Positions 1-44,642 are shown, counted from the first letter of the stretch. The stretch is 45,958 nt of DNA from Selaginella moellendorffii (GCF_000143415.4 NW_003314278.1:1149951-1195908), one strand, 5' to 3'. Numbers and translations: made by a program. The notes: generated by a model from the letters alone, not told the origin.

Positions 1-811
1 TCCAAATACTAATACGGGTCAAGGGGTGAAAGCCCAAAGCGTGCGTCTCCCAGGGGGGGGGGGGGGGGGGGGGCCTACAAGGGGTTCCAAAAGTATAATA
101 GGGATAATGGGGCCCCGGAACCCTTTTAAAAGGGACTTTCCAGGGGGGGCCCCAAAATGATTTGAGGTTGGGAATGGGACCAAGGGGCCTTGGGTGGGAG
201 TGAGCATGGACTTGGGTGGTGCCGGAGGGGCCATCCAAGGAAGTGCTCAAGAGTAGCTCCCACTCCCGAAAGGGAAACCGATTGCGGTGCTCCCGGCTCA
301 TGTGGAGTGGTGCCCCACTTGAGTACCATGCGGCTCATTAGTCATCGCCCTTCCTAGGGGCTTGGACCTTCCTTCGGGATGGAAGTGGGGGGGGGGTAGA
401 GGTACCCATACCGGGCCGTTAGGCCACGGTGTTTCGCCCCGACGTCCCGAAGCAAGTGCTGCACCCAAGGCTTGGGATTTAGAGGGTCCCATGATCAAGT
501 CTTGTTGTACCAAGGGGTGTTAGGAACCTGGAGGCTTGGTGTGCTTGGCTGCTTGTGCCTGCGGGGAGTGTAGCCGAACCTTAAGTCCAGTCTAACCCGG
601 GGAGGGGGATTGGGAAAGAATTGGGAATCCGTGGATGGATGGCTAACACTCCGTTGCTCGTGCAGTGAGTAGCTGAAAGCAAGTAGGACCAAGTAGGAGT
701 TGGTACCATAGGCGAGAACCTTGGCGAGGGAACTTAGCAAAAGCCAAGGCAGTGCCGGACGGATAGACGAGGTAAGCTAGCAAATTGGAAAGGAAAAATT
801 TGTGGCTTACA
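1..811 (+). repeat. 5' LTR of element A (3' part only)
   Basis: Matches 5321-6120; ends ...GGCTTACA immediately before the PBS. Confidence 0.92.
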
Positions 812-814
812 ATT

Positions 815-826
815 TGGTATCGGAGC
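815..826 (+). promoter_or_regulatory. Primer-binding site (initiator tRNA-Met type)
   Basis: TGGTATCGGAGC 3 nt after the LTR-terminal CA; one mismatch to the common plant TGGTATCAGAGC. Confidence 0.9.
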
Positions 827-870: not shown

Positions 871-2054
871 ATGGCAAGGGCAGGGCGTAAGCGAACCCAG
901 GCGGAGACGGAACTTCCGCCGGAGCTGGAGCCTCCAGTCGAACAAGAGGCTATGGATGAGGAATCCTTGCATGAGGAGGGCTCTAGTGAGGAAATTTCCA
1001 AACAGGAGTCCGGTGGCGAGGTTCGGTCGTCCAAGGCTCGATTGGACGTGCTAGAAGGACAGTTGGCACAGACCAATGCTCTGCTGGAGACTCTCGTACG
1101 CAAGCTAAAGCGTGACGAGAAGCGGAAGAAAAAGAGAAAGACTGCAGATGCTGGCAACGCAGAAGGTGCGGACCCTTCGGCAAGGACTGAGGCAAAACCA
1201 GACAAGGTCAAACAGACTGAAGTAGAATCAGTCCCTCAGGCAGTTCCCAAATACAAACCAAAGCCCCCACCGGTCTTCAAGGGAGTGAATGACTATAAGG
1301 TGGTGGAGGATTGGTTTTACGATATGGAGGACTACTTTCGAGCGTTGCGATTACCAAGCTCGGAGAAGGTCCCATGTGCAAAACCATACTTGGCAGATAA
1401 TGCCAAGTCTTGGTGGAGAATGACAGAGGCCAATGAAGGACCGGTGGCCACTTAGGACATGATGAAGGCGAGGATCTGTGCAACATACGTTCCTCCGAAT
1501 GCCACTCTGCATCTGAGAGATGAGCTGAGTAGGTTGAAGCAGACTGGAACCATCGAAGAATATGTGAATGGGTTCATGGCAAAGAGGATACTGGTCACGG
1601 ACATGGGGGATATGGATGTGTTCCATGCCTTCATATCAGGTTTGCAAACCTGGGCTCGCGGCGAGGTGATGCGGTGGAACCCGACCAACTACAAGGAAGC
1701 GTTGGATGCGGCCATCAAGGTGCATTTCAACGATAACCTGCGAAAGGGGAACACGACGGGGTTGGGATCCACGTTTAGCAAAGGGGCCAAACAAAGGGGA
1801 ACGTATAGCACGGGGAAATTCAAGAAGAGTTTCTCTAAGAATGAGTCCTCGGGGTTCCGGAAAGGCAAATCCGGTGGCCAGCGAGCGAGTACATGGGGGA
1901 GTCAAGCGAAAAAAGACAAACCCACGGATAAGAAGGTCAAATTGTATAGCAGCGTGGGAAACAACGTATGCTACAACTGCGGTGAAGCGGGACACTTTTC
2001 GAGGGAATGTCCCTACCCGAAGAAGGCCAAAACCAATATGGCCATCAAGTCGGG
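871..2054 (+). pseudogene. gag: gag (capsid-like region + CCHC zinc knuckle), in-frame TAG at 1453-1455
   Basis: PPVFKG...VEDWFYDMEDYF, LSRLKQTGTIEEYV and CYNCGEAGHFSRECP; ORFs 871-1455 and 1459-2103 are in the same frame. Confidence 0.9.
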
Positions 2055-3053
2055 TTGTTCGATAGGTTGGGAAAGGCAAAATACTTCTCGAGGATTGACC
2101 TAAGGTCAGGATACTACCAGATCAGGGTAGCCGAGGAAGATGTTGAGAAGACAACCTGTCGAACGAGGTATGGGAGTTTTGAGTTTTTTGTGATGCCCTT
2201 TGGGCTATGCAATGTGCCGGCCACGTTTTCGGCGCTAATGAACCACATCTTTGTACCCTATCTGGATCACTTCGTGGTCGTCTATATCGACGACATCCTG
2301 ATCTATAGCGAGACGCTAGAGGAGCATGCTGAACACTTGGCGAAGGTGTTTGAGAAACTAAGGGAACACAAACTGTATGCTAAAGAGAGCAAATGTGACT
2401 TTGCTCAACAAGAGGTAAAGTTTCTCGGGCATGTGGTGGGTCAGGACGGGCTCAAGGTGGACCCGGAGAAGGTCCAAGCGATCCAGGAATGCGAGCGACC
2501 ATCGAATGTACATGAGTTGAGGGCATTCTTGGGGCTATGCAACTACTATCGAAAGTTTATCAGACACTATTTGAGAGTAGCCCTACTTTTAACGGACCAA
2601 ACAGGAAAAGGGAAGATGGTATGGACAGCAGAATGCGAGGCGGCATTCGTCCACCTCAAAGGGAAGTTGAGGAAGGCTCCGGTGTTGGCATTACCAGATT
2701 TTGGTAAGGACTTTGAGGTAGACACGGATGCTTCGGACTTTGCGTTGGGCGCAGTTTTGAAGCAAGACAACCATCCAGTAGCGTTCTTCTTGAAGAAGTT
2801 GGACAAGGCTCAACGGAAGTGGCCTGCCCACGAGAAGGAATTGTTTGCGGTGGTCAAGGCGCTCAAGGAGTGGCGACACTACCTTGAGAGACACTTCAAG
2901 GTTTACACGGACAATGTGGCAACGAAACACTTGTTGTCACAGCCCGACCTGAGAGGGAAACAAGGTCAGTGGGCCAATGCCTTGGCTGAGTTTGATTGTG
3001 AGATTTTGTACAAGCCTGGGAAGAGCAACATCGTGGCAGATGCGCTAAGTTGA
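2055..3053 (+). pseudogene. pol: Reverse transcriptase + RNase H (RT N-terminus and protease absent)
   Basis: LFDRLGKAKYFSRIDLRSGYYQIR, VMPFGLCN, VVYIDDILIYS, DTDASDFALGAVL, ADALS followed by TGA. Confidence 0.95.
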
Positions 3054-3795
3054 AAAGCAAGCTTGAGGTTGGCGATATCCAACGCAATAGCAACCTTCTG
3101 GGATGATGTGCGGACAGCATATGAGAACGATGGTCTAGCACAAGAAGTGTTGCTGAGGAATCTAGAGGCGCGGGAAGCTCACCAGAGAGGTGAGCTACCA
3201 ACGGAAGAGAAAATGGGCTATGCGGAACGCAACAGACTCATCTATTACAAGCAAACGAGGGTGTATGTTCCAGAAGGGGACCTAAGGAAGGTAGCCTTAG
3301 AAGAGTGTCATGATGGACCTCTTGCGAGACACGGCAGAGTGCCCAAGACGATGGGCTTACTCAAGAGGAAGTACCATTGGCCAGATATGGCTAAGGACGT
3401 CCAAGACTATGTAAAGACATGTCCAACATGTCAGCAGGTCAAAGCCGTGACTAAGGCTAGTGGGGGCTTGTTGCAAAGCATCCCAATTCCAGATCGTCCG
3501 TGGAAATGTCTTACGATGGACTTCATCACGGGACTTCCCCCAAGCGAGGGGTTTGATGCGATAATCGTGGTGGTGGACCAATTTTCGAAAATGGCATATT
3601 TCATACCCACCACAACGGAAGTGGATGCGGAAGGTGTGGCGAAGCTGTTCTTCGAACAAGTGGTTTGAGTGCGGGGAAGGCCGGAAGAGATCATCTCAGA
3701 TCGAGATAAGATCTTCACTAGTAGATTCTGGAGGACTCTCCTGGAACAGTATCGCACCAAGTTGAAATTCAGCACCGCCTATCACCCACAGACAG

Positions 3796-3842
3796 ATATG
3801 GGGTATTAAGTCAAGTTTGGTGACACTAACACTTCTTAACAG
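3796..3842 (+). other. 47-nt intron-like insert in integrase (AT..AG; donor probably a mutated GT)
   Basis: Removal restores HPQTD-GQTER exactly; contains branch-point-like CACTAAC, pyrimidine tract and CAG. Confidence 0.75.
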
Positions 3843-4260
3843 ACGGACAAACGGAAAGGGTGAATAGGCAGCTGGAGGATTATTTGCGATGCTATGTCTC
3901 GGGAGACCAGACCGATTGGGTAAGTCATTTGGGACTTGCAGAAATGTGTTATAACAACTCACCACATTCGAGTATCGGGGTGAGTCCATGGGAAGTCATC
4001 AATGGGCGAGCTATTGAAGGTCCTGTGGAACTCGGCGTGGCCGAGTATCATGGAGAGCTACCTGCAGTGGAGGCATTCACGGCGGAAAGACTCAACATTT
4101 GGAATCTAGTGAGGGATTCCTTGGAACGAGCTCAACAAAGGCAAACCAAGTACGCGAACCTAAAGCGCCGAGATGTAGAGTTCCAAGCTGGGGAGAAGGT
4201 GTGGCTGAACACCAAGAACCTCAGGCTACCAAGTGGGATCAGCCGAAAGTTGACCCAAAG

Positions 4261-4312
4261 GTAAAAATGCATGTATTCCCGTAAATGAATTGATCTTGAG
4301 TTCCTTAAGCAG
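4261..4312 (+). other. 52-nt GT-AG intron in the integrase C-terminal (GPY) region
   Basis: AG|GTAAAA...TTAAGCAG|GT; removal restores KLTQR-FAGPY and joins ORFs 3860-4264 and 4290-4694. Confidence 0.85.
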
Positions 4313-4740
4313 GTTTGCGGGGCCTTACGAGATTGAGGCACGAATCGGTAAAGTGGCTTACCGACTCCGACTTCCTCAAGAGATGGGGAAGATGCACCCA
4401 GTGTTCCACGTGAACTTACTCAAGCCGTACTTTGAGGATCCGCTTCGCAAAGACCAAGTAAGACCTTTACCTGAGGTTATCCAAGGGGAAGAGGAATACA
4501 AAGTCAAGGCCATCCTCAATGCGCGCAAGAGCAAGCGACAAGGACGCGAGGTGAGAGAGTTCCATGTGAAGTGGAAAGGATTTCCACACTGCGAAGCAAC
4601 ATGGGAACCGGAGGAAAACCTAGCGAATGCGCGAGATCTAGTGGAGGAATTTCTGCAAGGCAGAACTCTATGTACTTATGCAAAGTTCAATTAAAAATAT
4701 CAATTTGCAAAATTGAGCAAGTGGCATACGTTGGGACCCG

Positions 4741-5034
4741 AAGGCGCGCTGAAGGTAAGCTAATTAGCATGGGTTAGCTAGGTCGACCAGGCGTAGGGAG
4801 CTACGCCCGACTCCCTGCGGGGATGTCGAATCCGTAGACGTATTCTACGGAGGTTGGGTTCGAGTCCCAACCCCCTAGTAAAGCAAGGCTGGGTTCAAGT
4901 CCCGACCCCATACTAGGGCGTGGTGAGGTGAGGAGTATAGGGACACCTATATTCCGTTGTCATGGGCTCTTGGCCAGGGAGGCTAATTTAGGCACACCGC
5001 TAAGTGGGGGGATGCCCCCGGAGACATGGTCAAC
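4741..5034 (+). ncRNA. Conserved structured cis-RNA module in the 3' UTR of element A (tRNA-like hairpins, twin T-loops, four-way junction)
   Basis: Homologous to 41028-41290 and in part 41356-41467, with compensatory changes in several helices. Confidence 0.75.
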
Positions 5035-5086
5035 AAGTCGTAGGATAAAAAAGAGACGTTCGATGTGGGCATCGAACTTCTTCTAT

Positions 5087-5098
5087 GGGTGGTGGAGT
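5087..5098 (+). promoter_or_regulatory. Polypurine-tract equivalent of element A
   Basis: GGGTGGTGGAGT directly before the LTR start TGTAAC; identical in element B. Confidence 0.85.
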
Positions 5099-6120
5099 TG
5101 TAACGAACCAACTCGCCGAGGTGTCGTACGCTAAAGGAACCCCGAAAGCATGACCAAAATGACAAAGAGTTCATCGGATGGGACCAAGTCGAAGATCGGG
5201 TCCGAGACCGAGTCCGAAGTCGAGTCCGAGGTCGGGTCCGAGATCGGGTCCGAGATCAAGTCCGAGACCGAATCCGAAGTCGGATCCGAAATCGAGTCCG
5301 AGATCGAGCCAGAGACTAAGTCCAAATACTAATATGGGTCAAGGGGTGAAAGCCCAAAGTGTGCGTCTCCCAGGGGGGGGGGCTGCAGGGGGTTCCAAAA
5401 GTATAGTAGGGATAGTGAGGTCCAGGAACCAGTTTAGAAGGGACTCTCCAGTGGGGCTCCCAAACTGACTTGAGGTTGGGACTGGGACCGAGGGGCCTTG
5501 GGTGGGAGTGAGCATGGACTTGGTTGGTGCCAGAGGGGCCATCCAAGGAAGTGCTCAAGAGCAGCTCCCACTCCCGAAAGGGAAACCGATTGCGGTGCTC
5601 CCGGCTCATGTGGAGTGGTGCCCCACTTGAGTACCATGCGGCTCATTAGTCCTCGCCCTTCCTAGGGGCTTGGGCCTTCCTTCGGGATGGAAGTGGGGGG
5701 GGGGTAGAGGTACCCATACCGGGCCGTTAGGCCACAGTGTTTCACCCCGACATCCCGAAGCAAGTGTTGCACCCAAGGCTTGGGATTTAGAGGGTCCCAT
5801 GATCAAGTCTTGTTGTACCAAGGATTTTTAGGACCCGGAGGGCTTGGTTTATTTGCCCTATTGCCCCCGCGGGGAGATTACCCGACCCTTAAACCCATTT
5901 TAACCCCGGGGGGGGGATTGGGAAAAAATTGGAAACCCGGGGAAGGAGGGTAAACCCCCCGTTGCCCATCCCGGGGGTAGCTAAAACCAATGGGGCCCAA
6001 TTAGGGGTTGGTTCCTTAGGGGAAAACCTTGGGGGGGGAATTTCACAAAAACCAAGGCATGTCCCGGCCGGATAGGCGAGGTAATCTACCAAATTGGAAA
6101 GGAAAAATTTGGGGGTTAAC
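5099..6120 (+). repeat. 3' LTR of element A (~1.02 kb); last ~300 nt appear to be low-quality sequence
   Basis: Starts TG after the PPT; matches 1-811; contains a GAGTCC/GAGATC satellite at ~5197-5320. Confidence 0.88.
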
Positions 6121-6565
6121 CCCCTGGCAGCCCCCCCCCCCCCCCCCCCCCCTGGGAGATGCATGCTTTGGGCTTTCACCCCTTGACCCGTATTAGTACT
6201 CGGACTTAGTCTCTGGATCGATCTCGGACTCGATCTCGGATCCGACTTCGGATTCGGATTCAGACTCAATCTCAGACTCGATCTCGGATCCGATCTCAGA
6301 CCCGACCTTGGACTCGACCTCGGACTCGGTCTCGGACCCGATTTCAAATCTCGGACTCTGTCTCGAACTCGGTCTCAAACTCGGTCTCAAACTCGGTCTC
6401 CGAGTCGGTCTCGGACTCGATTCCGGACTCTATCTCGAACTTGGTCTTAGAGTCGGTCTTGGACTCGATCTTAGACTTGGTCCCATCCGATGAACTCTTT
6501 ATCATTTTGGTTATGCTTTCGGGGCTCCTTTAGCCTACGACACCTCGGCGAGTTGGTTCCTTACA
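6121..6565 (-). repeat. Inverted partial LTR of family A (LTR 5' end to just past the poly-G tract)
   Basis: Reverse complement of 5099-~5390 with a longer satellite; begins TGTAAGGAACCAACTCGCCGAGG on the minus strand at 6565. Confidence 0.88.
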
Positions 6566-7899: not shown

Positions 7900-8800
7900 A
7901 TGATGATTGTTAGGATGTAGATGGTGAAGACATTAATTCCTAAATCTATCTTTGTGAATTTACAGTTTGACAGTCCTAAAGCCACTCGTCCATCATTGCA
8001 TAGAGTTGATCATTGAACTTTGGTGGTAAATCAGCTTCACGACATTGCTCTGTTGTCATGTTTCAGTACTGCTTTTGCCAATAGGAACATGATATTCATA
8101 TGACTTGATTTTGTTGAAATATACTCCCAACGAGATTGGCATTTGCCCAGGCAAATGGTTGACACCATGTGTCAAACAATAGTTGAAAACTTAGTGAATG
8201 ATTGGAAGTCTAAAAAATCCAAAACTTACTCGGAAATTTGCTGCCAATGAACACTTGTAGTTTTGTGCCTCTTGAATGCTACCTCATTGCTGTAAGAAGA
8301 AATCATGCTTCTTTGCTTTATTCAGAGCCAACAATTCATTTAAAGACCAATGCCTCCAATTTCTAGTTGGTTTCAAAGGCTTCAGTGGAGTGGGAGCAGT
8401 AAAATTCCCCTTGCTGAATTGAGAACCATCATACAGAAACTCTTGCTAACATTGAGTGGAGAACACAATCTCCAAATCGTTCAACTGTTGCTCTCCCATT
8501 CTGCTCAAGACCCCAAAACCATGAATTGACATCTCAACATCAAATTATGTAACTATCCTTCATTATGCATCCCTATATATCCCTATACTAATTCCTAAAG
8601 CTCTCCAAGGATTTGGTTCTTGACAGGTATGGCATTGACTTTGCGGAAGATTTGATAAATTTCCTTGTAAAATCGCCTTGCATACATGCTTTGCAAAGAG
8701 CAATCCATTCAACATAGATTAAGCCCATCATAAAAGTGGGCCAATTGTCTTTAAATTTACTTCTCTGTATCAACATCCAATGGAGCCTTCGTAAATATCA
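7900..8800 (+). mobile_element. Heavily decayed Gypsy pol remnant
   Basis: Scattered motifs read by eye: LKTNASNF near 8340 (RNase H TDAS-like) and an integrase-like patch near 8590-8700; no intact ORF. Confidence 0.4.
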
Positions 8801-9296
8801 AGAATGGGCTGAGGCCCAGCAGAGAGGATAACATATAGAACTCAGAGAGGAGAACATATGAAGCATGTCGGGAGGCAACGAGGGAGATAGGATACAAGGA
8901 AGGCAATGGGAACGAGGTATCAATGAGCCCATCTCCACCCGCGCCTCAAACGCAAGCATTTCACACTACTACTTCCCACTTTCAACAGGAGCTCATGATA
9001 GACTCTCACCGGCATGGTCTTGAGAATCTGGATTGCCACGCCTAGCATGGCACTGATGTGGAGCAGGAGGAGCGCAGTGCTGCTGCTCAAATTCACAACA
9101 GCAGCATTGGATCTTGCGTTGCTGGCTATAGCAAACCCACTGCACGTAACACTCCAGATAGATTTCTGAAGACTCTCCTATGCCCAATCTCTGTGCGTCC
9201 CGCTATCCATCCATGGGGGATGGGGCGGCTCACGGAATGGCTGGATATCAACGATCGATGTTTGGGTTAACACATCAAAACAGTGAAGAATCAAGT

Positions 9297-10645
9297 CTGA
9301 ACTGCTCTGAAGATGTTCTCCAGCATCACATAAGGCAATGCATCACTCACAAGGCTGGACTGGCACGTAAATTCCGCAGCATGCATCCCTCGATTCATCT
9401 CCCCGTGGTTTTTGCACGCGTTAAGAAACGTTGCACATGCAACTCCATCAGCTGGACATCCTCGGCCTCTTTCAATCGCCCTAGTCGTCCGAGAGCATCA
9501 ACAATGCAGGTGTAGTGGTCTTGCGAAGGATCCAATCCATTGTCAAAGCTCATTGCCGTGAAGTAGCTTACTGCTTCCTTGACGAGCCCCAGATGGCTAC
9601 ACGCCGTCAAAACGATGGCAAACGCTGCCTTGTCGTCGTCAAAGCCGTGAAGAAACATCGCCCAAAAGAGCTGGATCGCAGAATACGCATGCCCGATCTG
9701 GGCATATGCTGCAAGAATCGTGTTCCAGGAGACCAAGTTCCAAGTTGGCATCTCATCGAACGCTTTCTTAGCATCAAGAATATTTGCATCTAGAGCATAT
9801 ACCACTAGAATTGTGTTCCATGAATAGGAATCCCAGCAGCAACACAAAGAAAACGCCCGGATCGCCTCTTTGAAACGACCTCTCTGGGCATAAAGAGCGA
9901 TTATCGCGTTCCATGAAACAAGATCTCTGTGTGGCATTTCTTCAAACAAGTGTTTTCTTGATCAGCATCACCGTTTTTCGCGTATGGCTTGATCATAATC
10001 GTCCACGAAAGTACGCTGTGCTGAGGCATACTATCAAACAAACTCTTGGCTTGAATCAAATCCCCATTTTGGGCATAGCAGCAGTGCATCGCCCCCCAGA
10101 GGATCGCGTTTCGGTGGACAATCTCCTGGAAAGACATCCTCCGCCTCCTCCACGAATCCATTCTCCGCAAACATGACGAGCATCACCGCGCGAGTGATGC
10201 TGTTCTTCTCGGGCATGGAATCAAACGCAGCCTTCGCATCGCCCACTCGCCCGCGCTGCACGAAACCCTGCACGAGGATCGTCCACGCTACCACATTCGT
10301 CTCGGGCATCCAATCCAGCACCTCTCTCGCTCGCCCAATCTCTCCGCCGAGAGCAAATCCCCGCAGCAGCGTCGCCCACGTCTTGCAGTTCCTCTCGGGC
10401 ATCGCATCAAACACCGCCTTGCTCGATCCAATCCGCCCGCAATCGCCCAGCGCCTTGATCATCGCAGTGGAGGAAACTACGTCCCACACCGCCATTCGAT
10501 TGAACGCTGCCTTGGCCTCCCCCGGATGCCCACTCTCGGCATAGGCGCTCGCGAGCGCCGTCCACGACGCGATGTTCTTGGCCGGCAATGCATCAAAGAT
10601 CCTTCTCGATTCCCCCAAATGCCCACACCGCGCGTAGACAACCAG
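9297..10645 (-). pseudogene. PLS-class PPR (E-type) pseudogene, copy 1
   Basis: FDxMPxxxxxSW repeats, ACSHLGLV, HYTCIVDALGRLGRL; frameshifts between ORFs 10034-10618, 9901-10170 and 9395-9949. Confidence 0.9.
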
Positions 10646-10886
10646 TGTGAGCTACGCGCGCCATATTTTAAATCCGGGAGATTATTCGAGGTATATTCAT
10701 CACAAGGCCTTTGCTTTTATTTGTTAGAGTTTCCTTTCTCTAGCAACTTTAAGGAGCTTCCGCGCTTCGCTCGTGGCTCCAAAGAATCACCCTAGCCAAA
10801 AAAAATTCCTCCTTCCACGACTACTACTTCGCTACACTGCTCTACCAAAATCCACCCAGCAACACTACTTACTTGTGGAGTGTGAT

Positions 10887-13861: not shown

Positions 13862-13976
13862 CTTGCCTTGCAAGAACAAGGACACCCTGGAAGAAGCAAA
13901 GATTTTACTCTCTGGTGACAATTCCTCTACTCCACTGGGCTTATAAGATTGGCTCTCTCCTCCATTCTCTATAGCA

Positions 13977-15671: not shown

Positions 15672-15970
15672 AAGAGAAACTACAAGAGGATATGTATATT
15701 TCATGGATACAGTTTTCAGGTATGAGAAACATAGCTTTGGTTTGGAAATCCCTGGCCTGATCAATAACAGTCTCTTTGGCACAAGCAGGGTGCGCCTCTC
15801 AAGGCATCCAAATCTGTTCTAGCTCCCATTTGGAAATAAGAAAGATTACAAGTGCCATTTCCTACTCATCCATTCCCTTTGAAAACTTTCTTTCTATTCT
15901 GCAGGGTGGAGTTTTACATATAATGTTGTTGTCACAAATAATTATAAAGCAAGTATAAGAGAATATTGCT

Positions 15971-18270: not shown

Positions 18271-18449
18271 GAGAAGTTTGACATATGTTATCAAACATAT
18301 TATCTAGCATAGCAATCAGGGATGCTCAACATCCCAAACAATTCTCCCCATTGGAAATAAGAAATATCACAAGTGCCATTTCCTACTCATCCATTCCCTT
18401 CGAAAACTTTCTTTCTATTCTGCAGGGTGGAGTTTTATATATAATGTTG

Positions 18450-36650: not shown

Positions 36651-38572
36651 TGTGAGACACAAAATCCCTAGGCCCCAAAGTGGAGCTGGAAGGGCGCCAC
36701 ATGGTAGTGGCCGAAGCGAGAGCCAAACGATGCAACGTGTATGTACATTTCTCCAAGTCCCTTAGGGACTGATACAAAAAAGCAAGAATCCCTTAGCGCT
36801 GTTCACTCAACTACGCTGTCCTGCAATTCTCCACCTAGTAGTGATCGCTGCCCTCCAATCGTGGCTGCTGTGGTCGTCGCCTCCGCAGTGCATCCAGCGC
36901 CAGGAAGCGAGAGCCAAACGAGCGTAACACGTTTGGACCAAAAGCTCCGACTTGAAAAGTCAAGAGCGGGAGTGGAACTCCCAACGAAGTGCTCGAGGAA
37001 CGAGCACGAAGCGAGCAAAAGGCGAGGCTCCAAAAAGGGACCCAAAAGGGCCAACACATGACACGTGGGAGTCCGAGATGGACCCGAGTTGGAGTCTGAA
37101 GTGGAGTCCGAGATGGACCCGAGTTGGAGTCCGAAGTGGAGTCCGAGATGGACCCGAGTTGGAGTCCGAAGTGGAGTCCGAGATGGACCCGAGATGGAGT
37201 CCGAGATGGAGTCCGAGATGGAGTTCGAGGTGGACCCGAGATGGACCCGAAATGGAGTCCGAGATGGAGTCCGAGATGGACCCGAGATGGAGTCCGAGGT
37301 GGACCCGAGATGGACCCGAAATGGAGTCCGAGATGGAGTCCGAGATGGACCCGAGATGGAGTCCGAGATGGAGTCCGAGATGGACCCGAGATGGAGTCCG
37401 AAGTCGAGACCGAGACCAGGACCGAGACCGAGACCGAGACCAAGACCGAGATCGGGACCGAGACCGAGACCGAGGCCGAGGCCTAGACCGAGCCCGAGCC
37501 CGAGTCCGAGTCCGAGTCCAAGTCCGAGTCCGAGTCCGAGTCCGAGTCCGAGTCCGAGTCCGAGTCCGGAGCCTGAGAGGGTGAAAGCCCAAAGCGTTCG
37601 TCTCCCAGACCCTGGGGGGTTTGGTGAGCTCCAAAAGTATAGTAGGGGGAGGACTGCAGTGGAGCCAGTTTGGCCAGGAAAGGCCAGTTTGGCCCAGGAA
37701 GGCCGGACCCAGTGTTGGGTGATGAGCTGCCCACTGGGAAGTCCAAGACTAGAGTGAACACGGACCGACAAGTGGGGTAGCTTGGTGAAGTGTTCAAGAG
37801 CCGGCTCTAGTTCCCCCGGGAGATCGACTGGCCGATGCTCCCAGTCCAAGTGTGGGTGGCACTACCTACTTGGACACCTGTCGTGGCTCAACGGAACCTC
37901 GCTCTAAGCCCATGGCTAGAGCACCTAAAGGCGAAAGGCGAGGAGAGTACCCAGGTGGCTCGCGTAAGGCCACGGTGTTCCGAAATGTTGTCCCGAAGGC
38001 CCAGACTGTGGAAAGGAAGAGGAACAGTCCTCTGGGGTAGTGACCAAGGACACAGTCGTGTGGTGGGGAAGTCCTAGAGGACCGTGGGACTTAGTGGTCG
38101 GGCCTGTGGGTCTTGATCCAGTGGCAGTGTTGGCAAACTCAGCCAGGGGCAGAAAGGGACTTAGTGGGGACTGACAGAGGGATATTGGGGAAGGCTATTC
38201 CCCTTGTCGGTGGGCATCCTAAGGATGCTAAGGAGTGGATCTGAGATGACCACTCACGGATGGTTTGCCTAGTCTTGGAGAGCCAAGACTGTGATGCAAG
38301 TGGTATTGGACTACCAGTGTGGCAAAGGTGATTGGGCATGGCCTTAGCGTAACGGGCTGCTATGTCGGTGGTACCTTTGAGTGTCGGTCATGGGATCGGA
38401 CACGTGGAGCACTTGGACCAAGTGCAAATGTTGAGTGGCATGGATGCCATTCTCGGGGCTAGCAAGTCCCAAGTCTTGGATTGGACTTATGGAGGTGGTG
38501 AATGAGACTCCTCCAAGTGGTCAGAGGTGTGGTTAAGTGACTAAAGTAGAATGGAAAATTTAGTCGCTTACA
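36651..38572 (+). repeat. LTR 1 of element B
   Basis: TGTGAG...GCTTACA; nearly identical to 42715-44642. Confidence 0.95.
37068..37570 (+). repeat. CpG-rich minisatellite in the LTR (GGAGTCCGAGAT / GGACCCGAGAT grading into GAGACC, GAGCCC, GAGTCC)
   Basis: Directly visible; repeated at ~43132-43640. Confidence 0.95.
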
Positions 38573-38575
38573 ACT

Positions 38576-38587
38576 TGGTATCGGAGC
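38576..38587 (+). promoter_or_regulatory. PBS (initiator tRNA-Met type)
   Basis: TGGTATCGGAGC, identical to element A. Confidence 0.9.
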
Positions 38588-41027
38588 TGTTCCTTAGTCC
38601 GACTTTTATTGGTGCTCAAGTATATCACCACTAGTGTTGGCATCGGAAGGTCCGAGGAGTGGGCCTATCCTTGAGGAGTAGCAAGTCGGGAAGACATGGC
38701 TCCCCATTACAGTTCATGTATGAACTTGTAGACGAGGTGGTGGATAGAAAAGGGCCAATAATGGAACGACTTTGGGATCTTGGGAACAGTGCAAGGTTTT
38801 CCTCATTGAGTTGAGGATGTGATCCGGATGAGCATTTGTCTCAGCAAATTGGCTAAGGTTGTCATGGTAAACAACTAAAGTTGGGATCACGGGAAAGATA
38901 GAGACTCCAAAACAATAAAGGAGTCACAAGATTATCCTCATATAGTTGAGGTTGGTGCTCATGAATGTGAGGCCAGAGGTAATGACCGTGGGAGGTCAAA
39001 TACGGAAAAGGACTCAAGTCCTTGAAATGGTAGCCGGGGCTACCTTTAATAAATGCTGGAACAACCCAAGGAGTTGGGGGGTGTACTTAGAGATGAGTGG
39101 TATTCTCATCGCATGGACAAGTAGTCCTAAGGGGCAAAAGTTGCCTCCAGAGAACAAAATCAAGTGTCGGAGTAACACTTGTGAAAATAGTCCTTTTGAG
39201 TAGGACAGGAATGCAAGAAGTGTATTCCAGTGAGCTAGTGCCTCACAAGTAGGACCTTACGGGTCTGTGGATTAACCAAGTCCAAAACTGCTGGATGACT
39301 CAAGTAGAGTCAACGGATGGTCCTAAAAGGACTGATGGAAGCATTTGGACTGTGGTGTGTTGTACCCCACAAAGGATGGGGGGGGGATCATAGGATCCAA
39401 GGATGAGAACAGAGGGTATCTCATCGATGGCAAAATGTGCCATGCTAAAGTTATGGGAAAGGTGTTCCCAGAAGAAAACAACTTTGACATAAAGTTGTGT
39501 GTGACCTCTATGGTGCAGTGCCAACGGATGGTTGGCATGAGAAAGAGCGGTGTTGGTCTTGGCAAAGACTTAGACACGAAGGGGAAATGTCATAGAGGTA
39601 GGCTCGTGGAGCCGATGGTGTGGAGACACCAAATGTGCCAAGGTGTGATACCTTGAGGCTATGTTGGTGGGTTCATGAGAACCCCTTGCCAAAGGAATCC
39701 CAATGGAAATGGGAATGGCATAGCCTAAGCTGTAGAGCATGCAGTTGGAGTGTGGTGACCCAGATAATGATGGAGGTGTGAAAGCACCAAAACAATGAGT
39801 TGTAGGACTTGACAACTATGAGGCAACTAAGCAAGAGGTGCAAAATAACTGGTTGAACGGGTAGAAGGTAGCTACCCAAGACTTCTTAATAGCATAGGGA
39901 AGTCGGATACACCCTTACGGGAGATAAGTGCTTGTGTTGCGATATAGTAAGTCAATGTCATAAAAGGAAATACTCATTGTCAAGAAAGCCATCATTGGGA
40001 CACCCGAACACTCTAGAACACCAAAAGGTGGTGTTTGATGTCGCGAGGGCAATGGATAAAGCCCAAGGGACTAAGTCCCTAGCGAATGATGGATAGAAGG
40101 TGCTATCCAAATGTCCAAGGTTGCGGAGATAGGAGAGGACTGTCTACCCAAGTTGGACAAAGCTAAAAATGGAATTTTGGCAAGGCTAGTGATGGGCATG
40201 TAAAGGCCCATAAGCAACAATGTAATCCCAGTGTGTGGGATTATAAGGTGAGCATACCCGGATTGAGGAACCACTCCCTGGGCTATTGGGTAGGTTCATC
40301 CCTAAGAATACTTGCTAAGGCATGATAGAAAGTGCAAAGCTATCCTCCTGATCTGGAGGAGAATGACCGAAGGAAAGGTGTGAAGCCAAAGGCAAGTAGT
40401 ATTGGGATGTAACTGAACCATAGAAATCGAAGGGCATAACCAAGGTTGGTTATGCCAGCTGGGAGTGGGGAATCAAGTGGGGGCTCGAGGGTGTTGCCGC
40501 TAGCAACCGTGACGCCATGGAGAGTCTAAGTTATGGAATTGTCCATGTTAGACTATGTGGCATTTGGAAGGCTTGCAAAAGGGAGGCCTTAGCAAGCTGA
40601 GGGACAGAGTTCCTTCAAGGTTCCCAAAGACGATTCTAGGTAGCTTAGTACCTAGAAAGGCCAAGTGTAAATGGTTCATGGAATGCGCGAAATCAGAGTG
40701 GCGCAGCAGAAGCGTGGTCTTGAAGCTTGCCATGAGGCAAGGCTATCAAGGTTAGGGAAGTAGTTCCCGAGTGTTCAAAGAGAGGGCTTTGAACGAAAGT
40801 CGATGGTCAAGGACTTTCACGCTTATGCAGGAACCATGTTACAGTGGTCGGAGAACTTGCCAAGCGAGATTGGCACGTCGGGGGAACAAATACCCTAGTT
40901 GAAGGTGATAACTTCAAAAAGGGTGGGCCATGGGGCCGAGCATGGAGGAGTCCATGCATGATCACAGACATGTCAAGTGAGAGGACTTGGCAGTGTGGAG
41001 GAACTAGGTTCCTAAGCTGTGATCTGT

Positions 41028-41467
41028 AGCGCGCTTTAAAAATAAGTTGGTGCACCGGCGTGGGGAGTCACGCCAGGCATCTTGTGTGATGCCGTCCGTA
41101 GATGCATATACGGAGGTTGGGTTCGAGTCCCGACCCTCTAGTGCTTGGGTTCGAGTCCCAAATCACTAGGGCGTGGTGATGGTTTGGAATATGAGGACAC
41201 TCATATTTCGGTGGTCATGGACTCTCAGTGGGGAGACTGGTTTGGGCACACCGCCAAGCGAGGGATGCCTCGGAGTCGTGATGCACGGTTAGATTGCTTA
41301 GTGTGAAAGCTTAGCATATCTAACTTGAACGCTTTGGTGCAAGTGGCACCAAGGTCGTGGTGAGTGAGATGGGGACACCTAATCTCAGTTGCTATGAACC
41401 CTTGGCCGTAAGGGCTGGCTTAGGTGCACCGCCAAGTGTGGGGGATGCCCCCGGGGTTATAGTCAAC
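41028..41467 (+). ncRNA. Conserved structured cis-RNA module in element B (3' half duplicated)
   Basis: Homologous to 4741-5034 with compensatory substitutions. Confidence 0.75.
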
Positions 41468-42480
41468 AACTTGGAGGTCTAGAAGACCAAGTACCTCTTG
41501 GCAACTCTGTTAAGGTGCCAAGGTGAGATCACTAGGTGATCTTATGGCCAGATAAGGACAAGGTCCTTGGTTGGCTAAGGAACGAAGTTCCTGGTTCAAA
41601 ATGTTGAAATTGAACTGTTTAAGGTGGTGTGGCTTGGTCGTGATGACCAAGTGGGAAGAGCACCTAAGGGAAATAAACTATGTCCGTGCGATGGCATAGT
41701 GAGTCCGAGGAAAGTAGTCTCTATAAAAGACCCATGGGAGGGTCACGAAGTTGGGCCGTGGATAGAGCCCATAGCAGAAGATGCTAAAGAGACGTACTAG
41801 GGGTGAACATCCTCCGGACTTGGCAAAGAAGAGTCTTTGCTATGGAACCGAAACAATACCTCAAGAAGGGAGGTAGAGATTCGATGTTGCTTGGTGCAAC
41901 AATCAATGGATAGGAGCAAAAGATGAGTGGCCAAGATAGGGCCGTGGAATCCCTTGGAAGGAATCCAAGTGACAAAGTTAGGCGAGGAACACTAATGTGT
42001 TGGACGCTAACAAGTTGCGGGAAAGGAAGTGTGTTTCCAAGGAGGGATTCCGAAATGCTCCGATTTGGCGAAAGTGGAAGCTCCAAGGGAGGGAGCGGTA
42101 AGGTAGCCAAATGATAGGGCCATGAACAGCCCTAGCACAAAGTATGATAACTGGAACTTTGGCACGAAATAGAAGAGAGGATGATGGTGCCCTCGAGTAG
42201 AGAACTTCCTAGGATGGGAAGTGGAGTTGCACAAAAAGGTGCAAGGCAAGGTGTCGGAGACACCTAGGAAATTGACTCCAAGAAGTCAAAATTCAAAGTT
42301 CCAAAGTGCAAAGGTTATATCGATGGAAATCGAGACTACTCGAGAAGGAGTAGTGGGATTGAATTAGAGAAGGGTCTCTAAGAGATTTAGCGAGGACTAA
42401 ACCAATAAAAGGAGAGAACCTCTACATGTGGTCCAATCAATCTCTAAGTTGGAGAGACTACCCTCCTTAGAGGATAGGCA

Positions 42481-42610
42481 AGGCATGGTGAGCCTTTGGT
42501 GTCAAACCATGGAGGCCTATGCAAAAGGCATGGTGAGCCTTCAATGTTAAACCATTGACGAATATGGAGAAGGCATGGTGAGCCTTCAATGTCAAACCAT
42601 TGACAAATAT
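42481..42610 (+). repeat. Three ~45-bp tandem repeats upstream of the PPT
   Basis: AGGCATGGTGAGCCTT at 42481, 42526 and 42571. Confidence 0.9.
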
Positions 42611-42702
42611 TGGCTAGGTGCCAAGGATGGAAATGGTAACACATGCGAGTGTTACTTTACAAAATGGTTTACCGTTCGATGAGGACATCGAACTTCGTCT
42701 AT

Positions 42703-42714
42703 GGGTGGTGGAGT
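42703..42714 (+). promoter_or_regulatory. PPT equivalent of element B
   Basis: GGGTGGTGGAGT before TGTGAG. Confidence 0.85.
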
Positions 42715-44642
42715 TGTGAGACACAAAATCCCTAGGCCCCAAAGTGGAGCTGGAAGGGCGCCACATGGTAGTGGCCGAAGCGAGAGCCAAACGATGCAAC
42801 GTGTATGTACATTTCTCCAAGTCCCTTAGGGACTGATACAAAAAAGCAAGAATCCCTTAGCGCTGTTCACTCAACTACGCTGTCCTGCAATTCTCCACCT
42901 AGTAGTGATCGCTGCCCTCCAATCGTGGCTGCTGTGGTCGTCGCCTCCGCAGTGCATCCAGCGCCAGGAAGCGAGAGCCAAACGAGCGTAACACGTTTGG
43001 ACCAAAAGCTCCGACTTGAAAAGTCAAGAGCGGGAGTGGAACTCCCAACGAAGTGCTCGAGGAACGAGCACGAAGCGAGCAAAAGGCGAGGCTCCAAAAA
43101 GGGACCCAAAAGGGCCAACACATGACACGTGGGAGTCCGAGATGGACCCGAGTTGGAGTCTGAAGTGGAGTCCGAGATGGACCCGAGTTGGAGTCCGAAG
43201 TGGAGTCCGAGATGGACCCGAGTTGGAGTCCGAAGTGGAGTCCGAGATGGACCCGAGATGGAGTCCGAGATGGAGTCCGAGATGGAGTCCGAGGTGGACC
43301 CGAGATGGACCCGAAATGGAGTCCGAGATGGAGTCCGAGATGGACCCGAGATGGAGTCCGAGATGGAGTCCGAGGTGGACCCGAGATGGACCCGAAATGG
43401 AGTCCGAGATGGAGTCCGAGATGGACCCGAGATGGAGTCCGAGATGGAGTCCGAGATGGACCCGAGATGGAGTCCGAAGTCGAGACCGAGACCAGGACCG
43501 AGACCGAGACCGAGACCAAGACCGAGATCGGGACCGAGACCGAGACCGAGGCCGAGGCCGAGACCGAGCCCGAGCCCGAGTCCGAGTCCGAGTCCAAGTC
43601 CGAGTCCGAGTCCGAGTCCGAGTCCGAGTCCGAGTCCGGAGCCTGAGAGGGTGAAAGCCCAAAGCGTTTGTCTCCCAGACCCTGGGGGGTTTGGTGAGCT
43701 CCAAAAGTATAGTAGGGGGAGGACTGCAGTGGAGCCAGTTTGGCCAGGAAAGGCCAGTTTGGCCCAGGAAGGCCGGACCCAGTGTTGGGTGATGAGCTGC
43801 CCACTGGGAAGTCCAAGACTAGAGTGAACACGGACCGACAAGTGGGGTAGCTTGGTGAAGTGTTCAAGAGCCGGCTCTAGTTCCCCCGGGAGATCGACTG
43901 GCCGATGCTCCCAGTCCAAGTGTGGGTGGCACTACCTACTTGGACACCTGTCGTGGCTCAACGGAACCTCGCTCTAAGCCCATGGCTAGAGCACCTAAAG
44001 GCGAAAGGCGAGGAGAGTACCCAGGTGGCTCGCGTAAGGCCACGGTGTTCCGAAATGTTGTCCCGAAGGCCCAGACTGTGGAAAGGAAGAGGAACAGTCC
44101 TCTGGGGTAGTGACCAAGGACACAGTCGTGTGGTGGGGAAGTCCTAGAGGACCGTGGGACTTAGTGGTCGGGCCTGTGGGTCTTGATCCAGTGGCAGTGT
44201 TGGCAAACACGGCCAGGGGCAGAAAGGGACTTAGTGGGGACTGACAGAGGGATATTGGGGAAGGCTATTCCCCTTGTCGGTGGGCATCCTAAGGATGCTA
44301 AGGAGTGGATCTGAGATGACCACTCACGGATGGTTTGCCTAGTCTTGGAGAGCCAAGACTGTGATGCAAGTGGTATTGGACTACCAGTGTGGCAAAGGTG
44401 ATTGGGCATGGCCTTAGCGTAACGGGCTGCTATGTCGGTGGTACCTTTGAGTGTCGGTCATGGGATCGGACACGTGGAGCACTTGGACCAAGTGCAAATG
44501 TTGAGTGGCATGGATGCCATTCTCGGGGCTAGCAAGTCCCAAGTCTTGGATTGGACTTATGGAGGTTGTGAATGAGACTCCTCCAAGTGGTCAGAGGTGT
44601 GGTTAAGTGACTAAAGTAGAATGGAAAATTTAGTCGCTTACA
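42715..44642 (+). repeat. LTR 2 of element B (internal, shared LTR)
   Basis: Preceded by a PPT and followed by a PBS (44646-44657). Confidence 0.95.

What the first reader, a model, noticed from the sequence alone, without database searches (positions are those of the whole stretch)
4790..4918. tRNA-like hairpin array with twin T-loops, conserved with covariation between a coding chromovirus and a non-coding LARD
Seen in A: GGCGTAG-GGAG-CTACGCC (4790-4807), CGACTCCC-TGCG-GGGATGTCG, TCCGTAGA-CGTAT-TCTACGGA, GGTTGGG-TTCGAGT-CCCAACC (4852-4872), then a CCCTAGTA/TACTAGGG stem enclosing a second T-arm GGCTGGG-TTCAAGT-CCCGACC. Seen in B (41057-41171), in the same order: GGCGTGG-GGAG-TCACGCC, GGCATC-TTGTGT-GATGCC, TCCGTA-GATGCATA-TACGGA, GGTTGGG-TTCGAGT-CCCGACC, and CTAGTG/CACTAG enclosing TTGGG-TTCGAGT-CCCAA. 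Stems change but pairing is kept, while the flanks are unrelated. Established: GTTCRANNC is the tRNA T-loop and Pol III B-box, and Cassandra TRIMs carry 5S-derived Pol III elements. Inference: the order of four hairpins ending in a T-arm, with no acceptor stem, suggests a tRNA mimic or a TFIIIC-binding/Pol III cassette under selection in the 3' UTR. I do not recognise this module as described.
Basis: partly seen in the sequence, partly recalled or inferred. Interest (0 to 1): 0.9.

Follow-up and report, generated by a model that had tools for sequence, protein, structure and literature searches.

The report
Structured 3' RNA domain of retrotransposons
Two related Selaginella retrotransposon families, one coding and one non-coding, share a roughly 265-base, hairpin-rich stretch just before their 3' repeat that includes two tRNA-T-arm look-alikes and is probably an RNA signal both need to be copied, though its job is not shown.

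Summary
The hairpins are real and sit at the stated coordinates. Both copies fold on their own into the same five-hairpin array (z about -5), and the twin T-loop pattern is not expected by chance.

Three points of the finding need correcting:
- The 3' flank is not unrelated. Homology runs about 130 nt further, into a sixth hairpin and a four-way junction.
- The two elements also share LTR ends, the primer-binding site and the polypurine tract with its hairpin. B is a non-autonomous partner of the A family.
- Covariation in the array itself is thin: 3 pairs changed on both sides, and the T-arms are nearly invariant. It is clear only in the downstream domain, where 11 of 29 pairs changed on both sides and 0 of 500 shuffles reached that.

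The window is Selaginella moellendorffii. Three more natural copies found there confirm the domain. G-U pairs place the structure on the sense strand.

It is not a tRNA, SINE, Helenus TRIM or Pol III gene: tRNA models find nothing, and there is no A box and no T-run terminator.

Best reading: a cis-acting structured domain of the genomic RNA, kept in the non-coding partner alongside the canonical cis signals. Likely roles are packaging, dimerisation or post-transcriptional handling. TFIIIC binding to the B-box-like sites cannot be excluded.

The parts
1..811 (+). Element A: 5' LTR, cut off by the start of the window
   Evidence: 1-809 matches 5321-6118 at 86%. It ends in ...CA, three bases before the PBS.
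815..826 (+). Element A: primer-binding site (12-mer TGGTATCGGAGC)
   Evidence: The same 12-mer is found at 38576 and 44646 in B. It differs by one base from the plant PBS printed in PMC7215508 and equals the start of Helenus-1_SMo-I.
871..4694 (+). Element A: gag-pol of a Ty3/gypsy chromovirus; broken (given as one part)
   Evidence: Pfam finds gag, zinc knuckle, RT, RNase H, integrase zinc finger, SH3 and chromo domains. Breaks counted: gag has 1 in-frame stop; pol has 1 large internal deletion that removes the protease and the start of RT (relative to copy L130 and to P0110), at least 2 frameshifts and 2 in-frame stops.
4781..5044 (+). Element A: the whole conserved structured domain (hairpin array, hairpin 6 and four-way junction)
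   Evidence: Homologous to B 41049-41280 at 73%. The fold has z -4.55. Among 265-nt stretches of the internal region it is one of the best conserved between A and A'.
4790..4807 (+). A hairpin 1 (7 bp, loop GGAG)
   Evidence: One A-U to G-C exchange between families, and one G-C to G-U change.
4808..4828 (+). A hairpin 2 (8 bp with a bulge)
   Evidence: B has a 6-bp hairpin of largely different sequence at the same place. The MAFFT alignment is unreliable here.
4831..4851 (+). A hairpin 3 (8 bp; the loop holds the self-complementary run ACGU)
   Evidence: The outer 6 bp are unchanged between A and B; the only change in that stem is one G-C to G-U in the decayed copy A'.
4852..4872 (+). A hairpin 4: T-arm look-alike 1 (7 bp, 7-nt loop TTCGAGT)
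   Evidence: The only change in the stem is U-A to U-G.
4873..4918 (+). A hairpin 5: 8-bp outer stem enclosing T-arm look-alike 2 (loop TTCAAGT); resembles a tRNA acceptor/T-arm minihelix
   Evidence: The innermost outer pair is A-U in A and G-C in B, read and hidden by an alignment gap.
4932..4955 (+). A hairpin 6 (10 bp, invariant loop GACA)
   Evidence: Two or three pairs are exchanged on both sides among the copies.
4959..5030 (+). A four-way junction: long-range closing helix (4959-4970 with 5020-5030) around three hairpins (4971-4985, 4986-5005, 5006-5019)
   Evidence: Predicted independently from A alone and from B alone. The closing helix has 5 of 11 pairs changed on both sides.
5058..5077 (+). 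A hairpin next to the PPT (GTTCGATG / CATCGAAC)
   Evidence: The same stem is found in B at 42674-42693, with a different loop.
5085..5097 (+). A polypurine tract
   Evidence: A 28-mer shared with B, differing at one position. The LTR starts with TG at 5099.
5099..6118 (+). Element A: 3' LTR
   Evidence: The start is fixed by the inverted LTR fragment 6143-6565, which matches from 5099 on, and by copy L130.
36651..38572 (+). Element B: LTR
   Evidence: Repeat 36651-39888 equals 42715-45958 at 98.8%. The PBS follows at 38576.
38573..42714 (+). Element B: non-coding internal region (PBS at 38576-38587)
   Evidence: No tblastn similarity to A's ORFs, and no ORF above 108 aa.
41049..41285 (+). Element B: structured domain (array 41057-41171, hairpin 6 at 41186-41209, four-way junction 41214-41282)
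   Evidence: B' (L131) is 98.3% and B'' (L132) 90.2% identical across the whole 41037-41500 query stretch, which includes this domain.
41349..41482 (+). Element B: second, more decayed copy of the downstream half (hairpin 6 plus junction)
   Evidence: 85.8% identity between B and B'', against 93.5% for the first copy.
42674..42713 (+). Element B: hairpin next to the PPT (42674-42693) and the PPT (42701-42713)
   Evidence: 100% identical between B and B''.
42715..44642 (+). Element B: second LTR, followed by a second PBS (44646-44657) and a second internal region that runs off the window

Best explanation
The five hairpins are the 5' half of a structured domain of about 265 nt. It comprises hairpins 1-5, hairpin 6 and a four-way junction, and lies in the sense-strand (genomic) RNA of a Selaginella moellendorffii chromovirus family. 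In the coding element it sits between the end of pol and the polypurine tract.

The non-coding family B shares with A only the following:
- the LTR and its ends;
- the primer-binding site;
- the polypurine tract with its hairpin;
- this domain.

The first three are the sequences a non-autonomous element is known to need in order to use another element's proteins. The domain is therefore most likely a further cis-acting signal. It would be read by the family's own Gag or reverse-transcription machinery (packaging or dimerisation), or by a host factor that handles the unspliced RNA (export or stability).

The two T-arm look-alikes would then be recognition modules borrowed from tRNA architecture, not a tRNA.

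Shown: the anatomy, the shared set of sequences, the pairing pattern and the strand. Inferred: that it acts in cis, and what it does.
For: 1. Same architecture from each sequence alone. Each copy folds on its own with z between -3.9 and -7.0.
2. Structures cross-check in the downstream half. A structure derived from A alone, tested on B, gives 11 changed pairs kept and 1 broken. The reverse test gives 10 kept and 1 broken.
3. Downstream domain across 8 natural rows: 29 pairs, 95.5% of cells paired, 11 pairs changed on both sides. 0 of 500 shuffles reach this, and slid controls give 0-3.
4. Strand. There are 60 G-U cells against 10 A-C cells. 98% and 96% of cells pair on the + strand, against 90% and 81% on the - strand.
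5. Shared set. A-B homology is limited to LTR parts, LTR end plus PBS (79%), the domain (73%) and the PPT region (83%). The rest of B's 4.1-kb internal region has no DNA or protein similarity to A.
6. No room for a shared leader signal. A's leader between the PBS and gag is about 44 nt, and B shares only about 8 nt beyond the PBS.
7. Conservation within families. A vs A': domain 90-94%, pol 89%, gag 86%, LTR 82-86%. B vs B'': array 96.2%, first downstream copy 93.5%, the remaining internal sequence 90% and 77%.
8. Between-family changes keep pairing far more often than within-family decay does. From: A vs B1 gives 17 kept and 2 broken. A vs A' and B vs B'' together give about 11 kept and 10 broken.
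9. Precedent. [quoted passage not shown] The musD transport element is a multi-stem RNA of about 400 nt next to the 3' LTR (PMC4588558).
Against: 1. Only three independent lineages of the domain were available: A, B1 and B2. A', B' and B'' are close copies. No R-scape-grade test could be run, and the tool's own notes warn that related sequences can beat shuffles without any structure.
2. The consensus structures were derived from the same sequences that were then counted.
3. In the array itself, stems are mostly invariant, so pairing there could reflect sequence conservation for another reason, such as DNA-level B boxes.
4. In B the domain lies about 1.2 kb upstream of the PPT rather than 13 nt, so position is not fixed.
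5. Chromoviruses at about 55% RT identity have no such module in the three loci that include their 3' untranslated region (L121, L123, L124); the fourth, L122, ends 166 nt after pol. It is therefore not general to the group.
6. No conserved 5'-3' complementarity was found.
7. There is no expression or probing data.
Confidence: 0.5

Rival explanations
1. Host tRNA-machinery mimic. Hairpin 5 (8-bp stem plus T-arm) imitates the acceptor/T-arm minihelix, and hairpin 4 imitates a T-arm. This would let a host tRNA-binding factor act on the genomic RNA. Candidates are RNase P or Z, exportin-t, the T-loop modification enzymes, the CCA-adding enzyme or EF1A. The outcome could be 3' processing, export, stabilisation or modification.
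For: - Both 7-nt loops and their closing G-C pairs keep the tRNA T-loop pattern in every lineage. The only loop variation that is not plain CpG decay falls at the purine position.
- The hairpin-1 loop begins with GG in all five copies, as a D-loop partner would. This is an inference.
- The only Rfam hint is to mascRNA/menRNA, a known tRNA-like 3'-processing element, but at chance level: 13 bits against a gathering score of 42.5, E 9.2.
Against: - No overall tRNA-like fold: ARAGORN finds 0 and Rfam tRNA finds none.
- Cleavage at this site would separate the body of the RNA from the PPT and 3' LTR.
- This reading does not explain the equally conserved hairpin 6 and four-way junction.
Confidence: 0.2
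2. DNA-level function. The two T-arm look-alikes are B boxes bound by TFIIIC. They would act as a chromatin boundary, as a target or anchor for integration, or as a partial Pol III promoter. The RNA hairpins would then be incidental.
For: - The two 11-nt cores are the best conserved letters of the array.
- tRNA-derived Pol III promoters do occur in non-autonomous LTR elements of this same species: Helenus-1_SMo (PMC10886601).
Against: - No box A as defined in PMC10886601, and no T-run terminator.
- In Helenus the tRNA-like part lies in the LTR, not in the internal region.
- Stems outside the boxes and the whole downstream domain keep pairing through G-U and two-sided changes that are specific to the sense strand. 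A DNA site does not predict this.
Confidence: 0.1
3. Neutral relic. An ancestor of A and B captured a tRNA-derived or hairpin-rich fragment. It persists by descent, and B kept it only because the event that replaced its coding region happened to spare it.
For: - Only three deep lineages are available.
- Array stems are mostly invariant.
- The second downstream copy in B is visibly decaying.
- Differences within a family break pairs about half the time.
Against: - Between families at about 73% identity, changed pairs are kept 17 times and broken 2 times.
- There are 11 two-sided exchanges in 29 pairs.
- The domain is as well conserved as the RT core within family A.
- All other non-LTR sequence that B retains is a known cis signal.
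Confidence: 0.15
4. Independent insertions of a tRNA-derived SINE or of a Helenus TRIM into two unrelated elements.
For: T-arm-like motifs are present, and Helenus-1_SMo exists in this genome and has the same PBS 12-mer.
Against: - Homology between A and B continues without a break for about 130 nt on the 3' side. There is no TSD, no tail and no TG..CA ends.
- The Helenus D-arm 20-mer is absent from the window at up to 3 mismatches.
- No A box.
- No tRNA call.
Confidence: 0.02

Closest known systems
3' post-transcriptional or transport elements of retroelements (musD MTE, MPMV CTE, IAP RTE)
   Same: A multi-stem-loop RNA domain of a few hundred nt lying between the last ORF and the 3' LTR. The MTE is about 400 nt, adjacent to the 3' LTR, and depends on long-range contacts (PMC4588558). 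From my own knowledge, the musD internal 3' region is also retained by its non-coding partner ETn.
   Different: No sequence or Rfam similarity. The host is a plant (lycophyte). T-arm look-alikes are not a feature of those elements. In B the domain is 1.2 kb away from the LTR. Function is untested.
Conserved RNA structure of LARD and TRIM internal domains (Kalendar and colleagues)
   Same: Non-coding LTR elements that keep the PBS, the PPT and a conserved predicted RNA structure (PMC7215508). B fits this description.
   Different: Here the conserved part is a discrete domain that is also present in the coding partner, so it can be delimited. B is smaller than the barley LARDs (LTR 1.9 kb, internal region 4.1 kb).
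[quoted passage not shown]
   Same: Same genome and the same PBS 12-mer. Both are LTR elements carrying tRNA-like letters (PMC10886601).
   Different: Helenus carries a whole tRNA-like unit with boxes A and B inside each LTR. Here only T-arm hairpins are present, there are two of them 28-35 nt apart, they lie in the internal region, and there is no box A.
tRNA-like structures of RNAs (plant-virus 3' TLS; mascRNA/menRNA)
   Same: Use of a T-arm or T-loop module outside a tRNA.
   Different: The domain is not at the 3' end of the RNA and has no acceptor-like end. Rfam finds no TLS match, and mascRNA scores only 13 bits against a gathering score of 42.5.
Ty3 bipartite primer-binding site (from my own knowledge; no paper was retrieved)
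   Same: A Ty3/gypsy element that uses sequences near its 3' end together with tRNA architecture during priming.
   Different: There the 3' sequences are complementary to the primer tRNA. Here the hairpins have the same sense as a T-arm and are of elongator type. No complementarity to the PBS region was found.

Membership tests
tRNA gene or tRNA-derived SINE | Cloverleaf detectable by tRNA models | tested here: not met
   ARAGORN finds 0 genes in the window. The Rfam tRNA model gives no match even at E up to 10.
tRNA gene or tRNA-derived SINE | Internal Pol III promoter: box A plus box B | tested here: not met
   B-box-like cores are present twice. Box A (TRGCY...YGG, as printed in PMC10886601) is absent from 4600-5100 and from 40900-41500.
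tRNA gene or tRNA-derived SINE | Pol III terminator (T run) or SINE tail, and its own target-site duplication | tested here: not met
   No run of four or more T within 600-850 nt downstream. The 3' flank is homologous between A and B, so there is no insertion boundary.
Helenus / TRIMp3 | tRNA-like sequence located in the LTRs of a short non-coding LTR element | tested here: not met
   The module lies in the internal region of 5-6 kb elements. The Helenus-1_SMo D-arm 20-mer is absent. The PBS 12-mer is shared.
Viral 3' tRNA-like structure (TLS) | Sits at the 3' terminus of the RNA with an acceptor-like end; matches the Rfam TLS families | tested here: not met
   It is internal, about 180 nt (A) or 1.5 kb (B) upstream of the 3' LTR. 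No Rfam match.
mascRNA/menRNA-type tRNA-like 3'-processing element | Rfam RF01684 at or above its gathering score | tested here: not met
   13 bits against 42.5, E 9.2, in A only.
Retroelement 3' transport or post-transcriptional element | Multi-stem RNA domain between the last ORF and the 3' LTR | tested here: met
   Met in A. In B the domain is 1.2 kb from the LTR.
Retroelement 3' transport or post-transcriptional element | Promotes export or expression of unspliced RNA through a host export factor | not testable with these tools
   No expression or binding data are available here.
Non-autonomous LTR element (LARD-like), for element B | LTRs, PBS and PPT present, internal region without gag or pol, cis signals shared with a coding family | tested here: met
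Chromovirus (Ty3/gypsy with chromodomain), for element A | gag, RT, RNase H and integrase in that order, with a C-terminal chromodomain | tested here: met
   Pfam finds Retrotrans_gag, zf-CCHC, RVT_1, RT_RNaseH, Integrase_H2C2, SH3_Tf2-1 and Chromo. The copy is broken.
Structured RNA under selection (general) | Statistically supported covariation over many independent sequences | tested here: inconclusive
   The downstream domain is strong for its sample size. The array is weak. Only three deep lineages were available, and no R-scape test was possible.

The most novel reading that the evidence does not exclude
The two T-loop hairpins, together with the GG-bearing loop of hairpin 1, form a tRNA-elbow or minihelix mimic inside a retrotransposon genomic RNA. 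This mimic would recruit a tRNA-handling factor, or the primer tRNA itself, to the 3' end of the genome. That would make it a packaging or priming platform built from tRNA parts, shared by a coding element and its non-coding parasite. It would be a kind of cis signal not described for LTR retrotransposons.
Probability: 0.2. Interest if true: 0.8.

Novelty: new variant of a known kind. Interest (0 to 1): 0.55.

Why it matters
Which RNA signals let plant LTR retrotransposons, and the non-coding elements that ride on them, be recognised for packaging and reverse transcription is largely unknown.

This case offers a natural delimitation. A coding family and a non-coding family share nothing in their internal regions except the PBS, the PPT and one domain of about 265 nt whose pairing is kept through two-sided changes. 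That points to a concrete, small and testable candidate for such a signal, in an early-diverging vascular plant.

The domain also contains two tRNA T-arm look-alikes. If they are functional, this would extend the use of the T-loop module to retrotransposon genomes.

If the domain turns out to be neutral, it still warns that T-arm-like hairpins inside transposons can pass for tRNA relics or B boxes.

Tried and rejected
SEARCHES THAT FOUND NOTHING USEFUL
None holds the module by BLAST or by the covariance model. Most are prokaryotic or phage tRNA genes with a nearby copy of the tRNA 3' part, or arrays of T-arm-like hairpins.
2. A specific 22-mer found nothing in genome contigs or viral contigs.
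3. Protein searches with the chromodomain and RT ORFs found no close relative. The best are 46% and 60% identity, and 57% among cluster representatives.
4. Four chromovirus loci from other organisms (L121-L124) showed no module; one of them, L122, ends 166 nt after pol, so its 3' untranslated region is largely unsampled.
5. Covariance model R1, built from the array in natural copies A and B, found only its own training copies in the window. This held with filters off.
6. Rfam at E up to 10 gave only chance-level hits.
7. A 5'-3' duplex scan scored no better than shuffles.

ANALYSES THAT MISLED
8. A structure taken from an isolated 136-nt piece of A made kept and broken pairs look alike. Folding in the 270-nt context fixed this. 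The pair counts therefore depend on the structure chosen.

WHAT WORKED
9. Helenus was considered and rejected.
10. PPR paralogues served as handles to fetch S. moellendorffii DNA. That is how copies A', B' and B'' were found.

RULE-BOUND OMISSIONS
ORF pieces were searched separately.
- Consensus lines that the tools printed by themselves were not used.

SLIP, DECLARED
- I stopped and sent none of it to any tool.
- The box-A test used the motif as printed in PMC10886601. No conclusion rests on the remembered letters.

Full report
OBSERVATION

The quoted hairpins are all present at 4790-4918 (copy A) and 41057-41171 (copy B).
- Folded alone, each copy gives the same five-hairpin array. A: -69.7 kcal/mol, z -5.5. 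B: -63.0 kcal/mol, z -5.2. None of 200 dinucleotide shuffles folds as well.
- The twin T-loop pattern (two 13-nt cores 10-40 nt apart) occurs exactly twice in the window, with none expected.
- ARAGORN finds no tRNA.
- Rfam finds nothing at gathering scores and only chance-level hits at E up to 10, with no tRNA among them.

SOURCE AND ANATOMY

The window is Selaginella moellendorffii, or something extremely close to it.
- A PPR-DYW ORF at 31287-32372(-) is 95-96% identical to several S. moellendorffii paralogues.
- Loci fetched from assembly GCA_000143415.2 are colinear with parts of the window.

Element A is a Ty3/gypsy chromovirus (Pfam domains; anatomy). Its parts are:
- 5' LTR, cut by the window start, ending at 811
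- PBS at 815-826
- gag-pol at 871-4694
- a 3' untranslated internal stretch at 4695-5084
- PPT at 5085-5097
- 3' LTR at 5099-6118

The copy is dead.
- gag has one in-frame stop.
- pol has one large internal deletion that removes the protease and the start of RT, at least two frameshifts and two in-frame stops.
- Its LTRs are 86% identical.

Element B has these parts:
- LTR at 36651-38572
- the same PBS 12-mer at 38576
- a 4.1-kb internal region with no ORF above 108 aa and no tblastn similarity to A's proteins
- the same PPT, with the same hairpin in front of it, at 42674-42713
- a second LTR, a second PBS and the start of a second internal region that runs to the window end

B is therefore a non-coding, LARD-like element in a tandem LTR-internal-LTR-internal arrangement.

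WHAT A AND B SHARE

A sensitive comparison finds homology only in:
- parts of the LTR (62-67% identity)
- the LTR end plus PBS (79%)
- 4781-5044 against 41049-41280 (73%), with a second copy of the downstream half at 41352-41477
- the PPT region plus the first bases of the LTR (83%)

So 'the flanks are unrelated' is wrong on the 3' side. Apart from this domain, everything B shares with A is a canonical cis signal.

A's leader between the PBS and gag is only about 44 nt, and B shares about 8 nt beyond the PBS. A signal common to both is therefore unlikely to lie in the leader.

THE WHOLE DOMAIN

Downstream of the array come two further parts:
- hairpin 6 (10 bp, invariant GACA loop)
- a four-way junction, in which a long-range helix of about 11 bp closes around three hairpins

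This architecture is predicted independently from A alone and from B alone. RNAalifold gives it as well.

MORE NATURAL COPIES

Protein and pattern searches found no copy outside this genome. PPR paralogues used as handles gave three further copies:

| Copy | Location | Identity |
|---|---|---|
| A' | L130:17059-17340 | 92.6% to A |
| B' | L131:327-790 | 98.3% to B |
| B'' | L132:20976-21435(-) | 90.2% to B |

PAIRING STATISTICS

Downstream domain, 8 rows:
- 29 consensus pairs, 95.5% of cells paired
- 11 pairs changed on both sides
- 0 of 500 shuffles reach the observed values
- slid controls give 0-3

Cross-validation avoids some circularity. The structure derived from A alone, tested on B, keeps 11 changed pairs and breaks 1. 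The structure derived from B alone, tested on A, keeps 10 and breaks 1.

Array, 5 rows:
- 35 pairs, 98.3% of cells paired
- only 3 pairs changed on both sides, one of them in the poorly aligned hairpin 2
- shuffles reach that count 187 times in 500
- hairpin 3 and both T-arms hardly vary

One further A-U to G-C exchange, in the innermost pair of the outer stem of hairpin 5, is hidden by an alignment gap; I read it.

The counts depend on the structure chosen. A fold of an isolated piece gave a misleading picture.

STRAND

G-U cells outnumber A-C cells 60 to 10. Pairing is 98% and 96% on the + strand, against 90% and 81% on the complement. The + strand also folds 14-19 kcal/mol more stably. The structure belongs to the sense RNA, or to plus-strand DNA.

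CONSERVATION

| Comparison | Region | Identity |
|---|---|---|
| A vs A' | array | 90.3% |
| | downstream half | 94.1% |
| | pol | about 89% |
| | gag | 86% |
| | LTR | 82-86% |
| B vs B'' | array | 96.2% |
| | first downstream copy | 93.5% |
| | rest of the internal region | 90% and 77% |
| | second downstream copy | 85.8% |
| | PPT region | 100% |

The best 265-nt stretch of A's whole internal region lies in the domain (93.2%), level with the RT core.

Differences within a family look like post-insertion decay. 19 of 22 are transitions, 8 are at CpG, and about half break pairs. Between families, changed pairs are kept 17 times and broken 2 times.

WHAT IT IS NOT

- Not a tRNA or a SINE. There is no model hit, no box A as printed in PMC10886601, no T-run and no insertion boundary.
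- Not Helenus, the tRNA-bearing TRIM described from this very species (PMC10886601). Helenus-1_SMo has the same PBS 12-mer. But its tRNA-like unit lies in the LTR, and its D-arm 20-mer is absent from the window.
- Not a 3'-terminal viral TLS.
- Not a mascRNA-type element: 13 bits against a gathering score of 42.5.

MECHANISM

Most likely (about 0.5) this is a cis-acting structured domain of the genomic RNA, which the non-coding family must keep in order to use the coding family's proteins.
- Candidate roles are packaging or dimerisation, or post-transcriptional handling of the unspliced RNA. The second would resemble the musD transport element, a multi-stem RNA of about 400 nt next to the 3' LTR (PMC4588558).
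- LARDs and TRIMs are already said to specify conserved RNA structures (PMC7215508).
- The T-arm look-alikes would be recognition modules. Hairpin 5 resembles an acceptor/T-arm minihelix.
- The loop of hairpin 3 holds a self-complementary run in both families (ACGU in A, AUGCAU in B). This is compatible with a kissing-loop contact but could be chance.

All of this is inference. What is shown is the anatomy, the shared set of sequences, the pairing pattern and the strand.

Rivals:

| Rival | Confidence |
|---|---|
| Host tRNA-machinery mimic | 0.2 |
| DNA-level B boxes binding TFIIIC | 0.1 |
| Neutral relic | 0.15 |
| Independent SINE or Helenus insertions | 0.02 (rejected) |

LIMITS

- Only three deep lineages of the domain were available.
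- No expression, probing or chromatin data were available.
ORF pieces were searched apart, and consensus lines printed by tools were not used.

VERDICT

This is a real, delimitable and apparently undescribed structured RNA domain, shared by a chromovirus and its non-coding partner. The tRNA and Pol III reading is largely unsupported. Interest is moderate to good. Novelty: a new variant of a known kind, namely the cis-acting structured 3' domains of retroelements.

Noticed in passing
window 36651-45958: Element B is arranged as LTR-internal-LTR-internal with a period of about 6064-6070 bp, and the repeats are 98.8% identical. This is a tandem array sharing the middle LTR, of the kind described for Cassandra and other non-autonomous elements.
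   Followed up: partly
window 5142-5347; 37033-37603; 43097-43673: Blocks of 12-nt and roughly 35-nt tandem repeats lie inside the LTRs of both A and B, and are related between the two families.
   Followed up: no
window 6120-6565: Directly after A's 3' LTR comes a long C/G homopolymer run and then an inverted fragment of a family-A LTR start (6143-6565 matches 5099-5382 in reverse). A similar G run interrupts the 5' LTR near position 50.
   Followed up: no
window 31287-33231 (-): A PPR-DYW (organellar RNA-editing type) gene with a 333-bp internal tandem duplication. It is split into two ORFs here. Segments 93-96% identical to it sit on three S. moellendorffii scaffolds, so this gene neighbourhood has been duplicated repeatedly.
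   Followed up: partly
window 8529-20212: Long direct repeats (8935-10648 and 18450-20212, 87-93% identical) flank PPR-like ORFs at 12745-14269(-). This is either another LTR element that captured PPR sequence or a segmental duplication.
   Followed up: no
window 21130-23118 (-): Remnant of a second, different Ty3/gypsy pol, 26-39% identical to A's RT and integrase pieces. No T-loop module lies near it.
   Followed up: no
window 41349-41482: B carries a second copy of the downstream half of the domain. It is less conserved between B copies than the first copy (85.8% against 93.5%) and has more broken pairs, as if it were redundant.
   Followed up: partly
window 4839-4843 and 41101-41108: The loop of hairpin 3 holds a self-complementary run in both families, but a different one in each: ACGU in A (partly in the closing pair) and AUGCAU in B. 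This is compatible with a family-specific kissing-loop contact, or with chance.
   Followed up: no
L130:13570-14515: The second family-A copy keeps about 0.95 kb of pol that the window copy lacks, but it is itself riddled with stops (16 counted inside the alignments). Neither copy is intact.
   Followed up: partly
PMC10886601 DataS1 (Helenus-1_SMo-I); L126:15671-15682(-): The 12-mer PBS of A and B is also the first 12 bases of the internal part of Helenus-1_SMo. It occurs once more in locus L126 next to a short insertion. This may be the standard initiator-tRNA PBS variant of this species.
   Followed up: no
L082:1016-1162; L073; L095; L103: Some metagenome contigs hold tandem arrays of T-arm-like hairpins with no tRNA gene called: three repeats about 30 nt apart in L082, and 34 cores in L073. 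They are unrelated to the module here, and their nature is unknown.
   Followed up: no
L001-L120 (for example L001, L005, L011, L014, L025): In prokaryotic or phage contigs the twin T-loop pattern usually marks a tRNA gene followed within 10-40 nt by a copy of its own 3' part. This is the signature left by elements that integrate into tRNA genes.
   Followed up: partly
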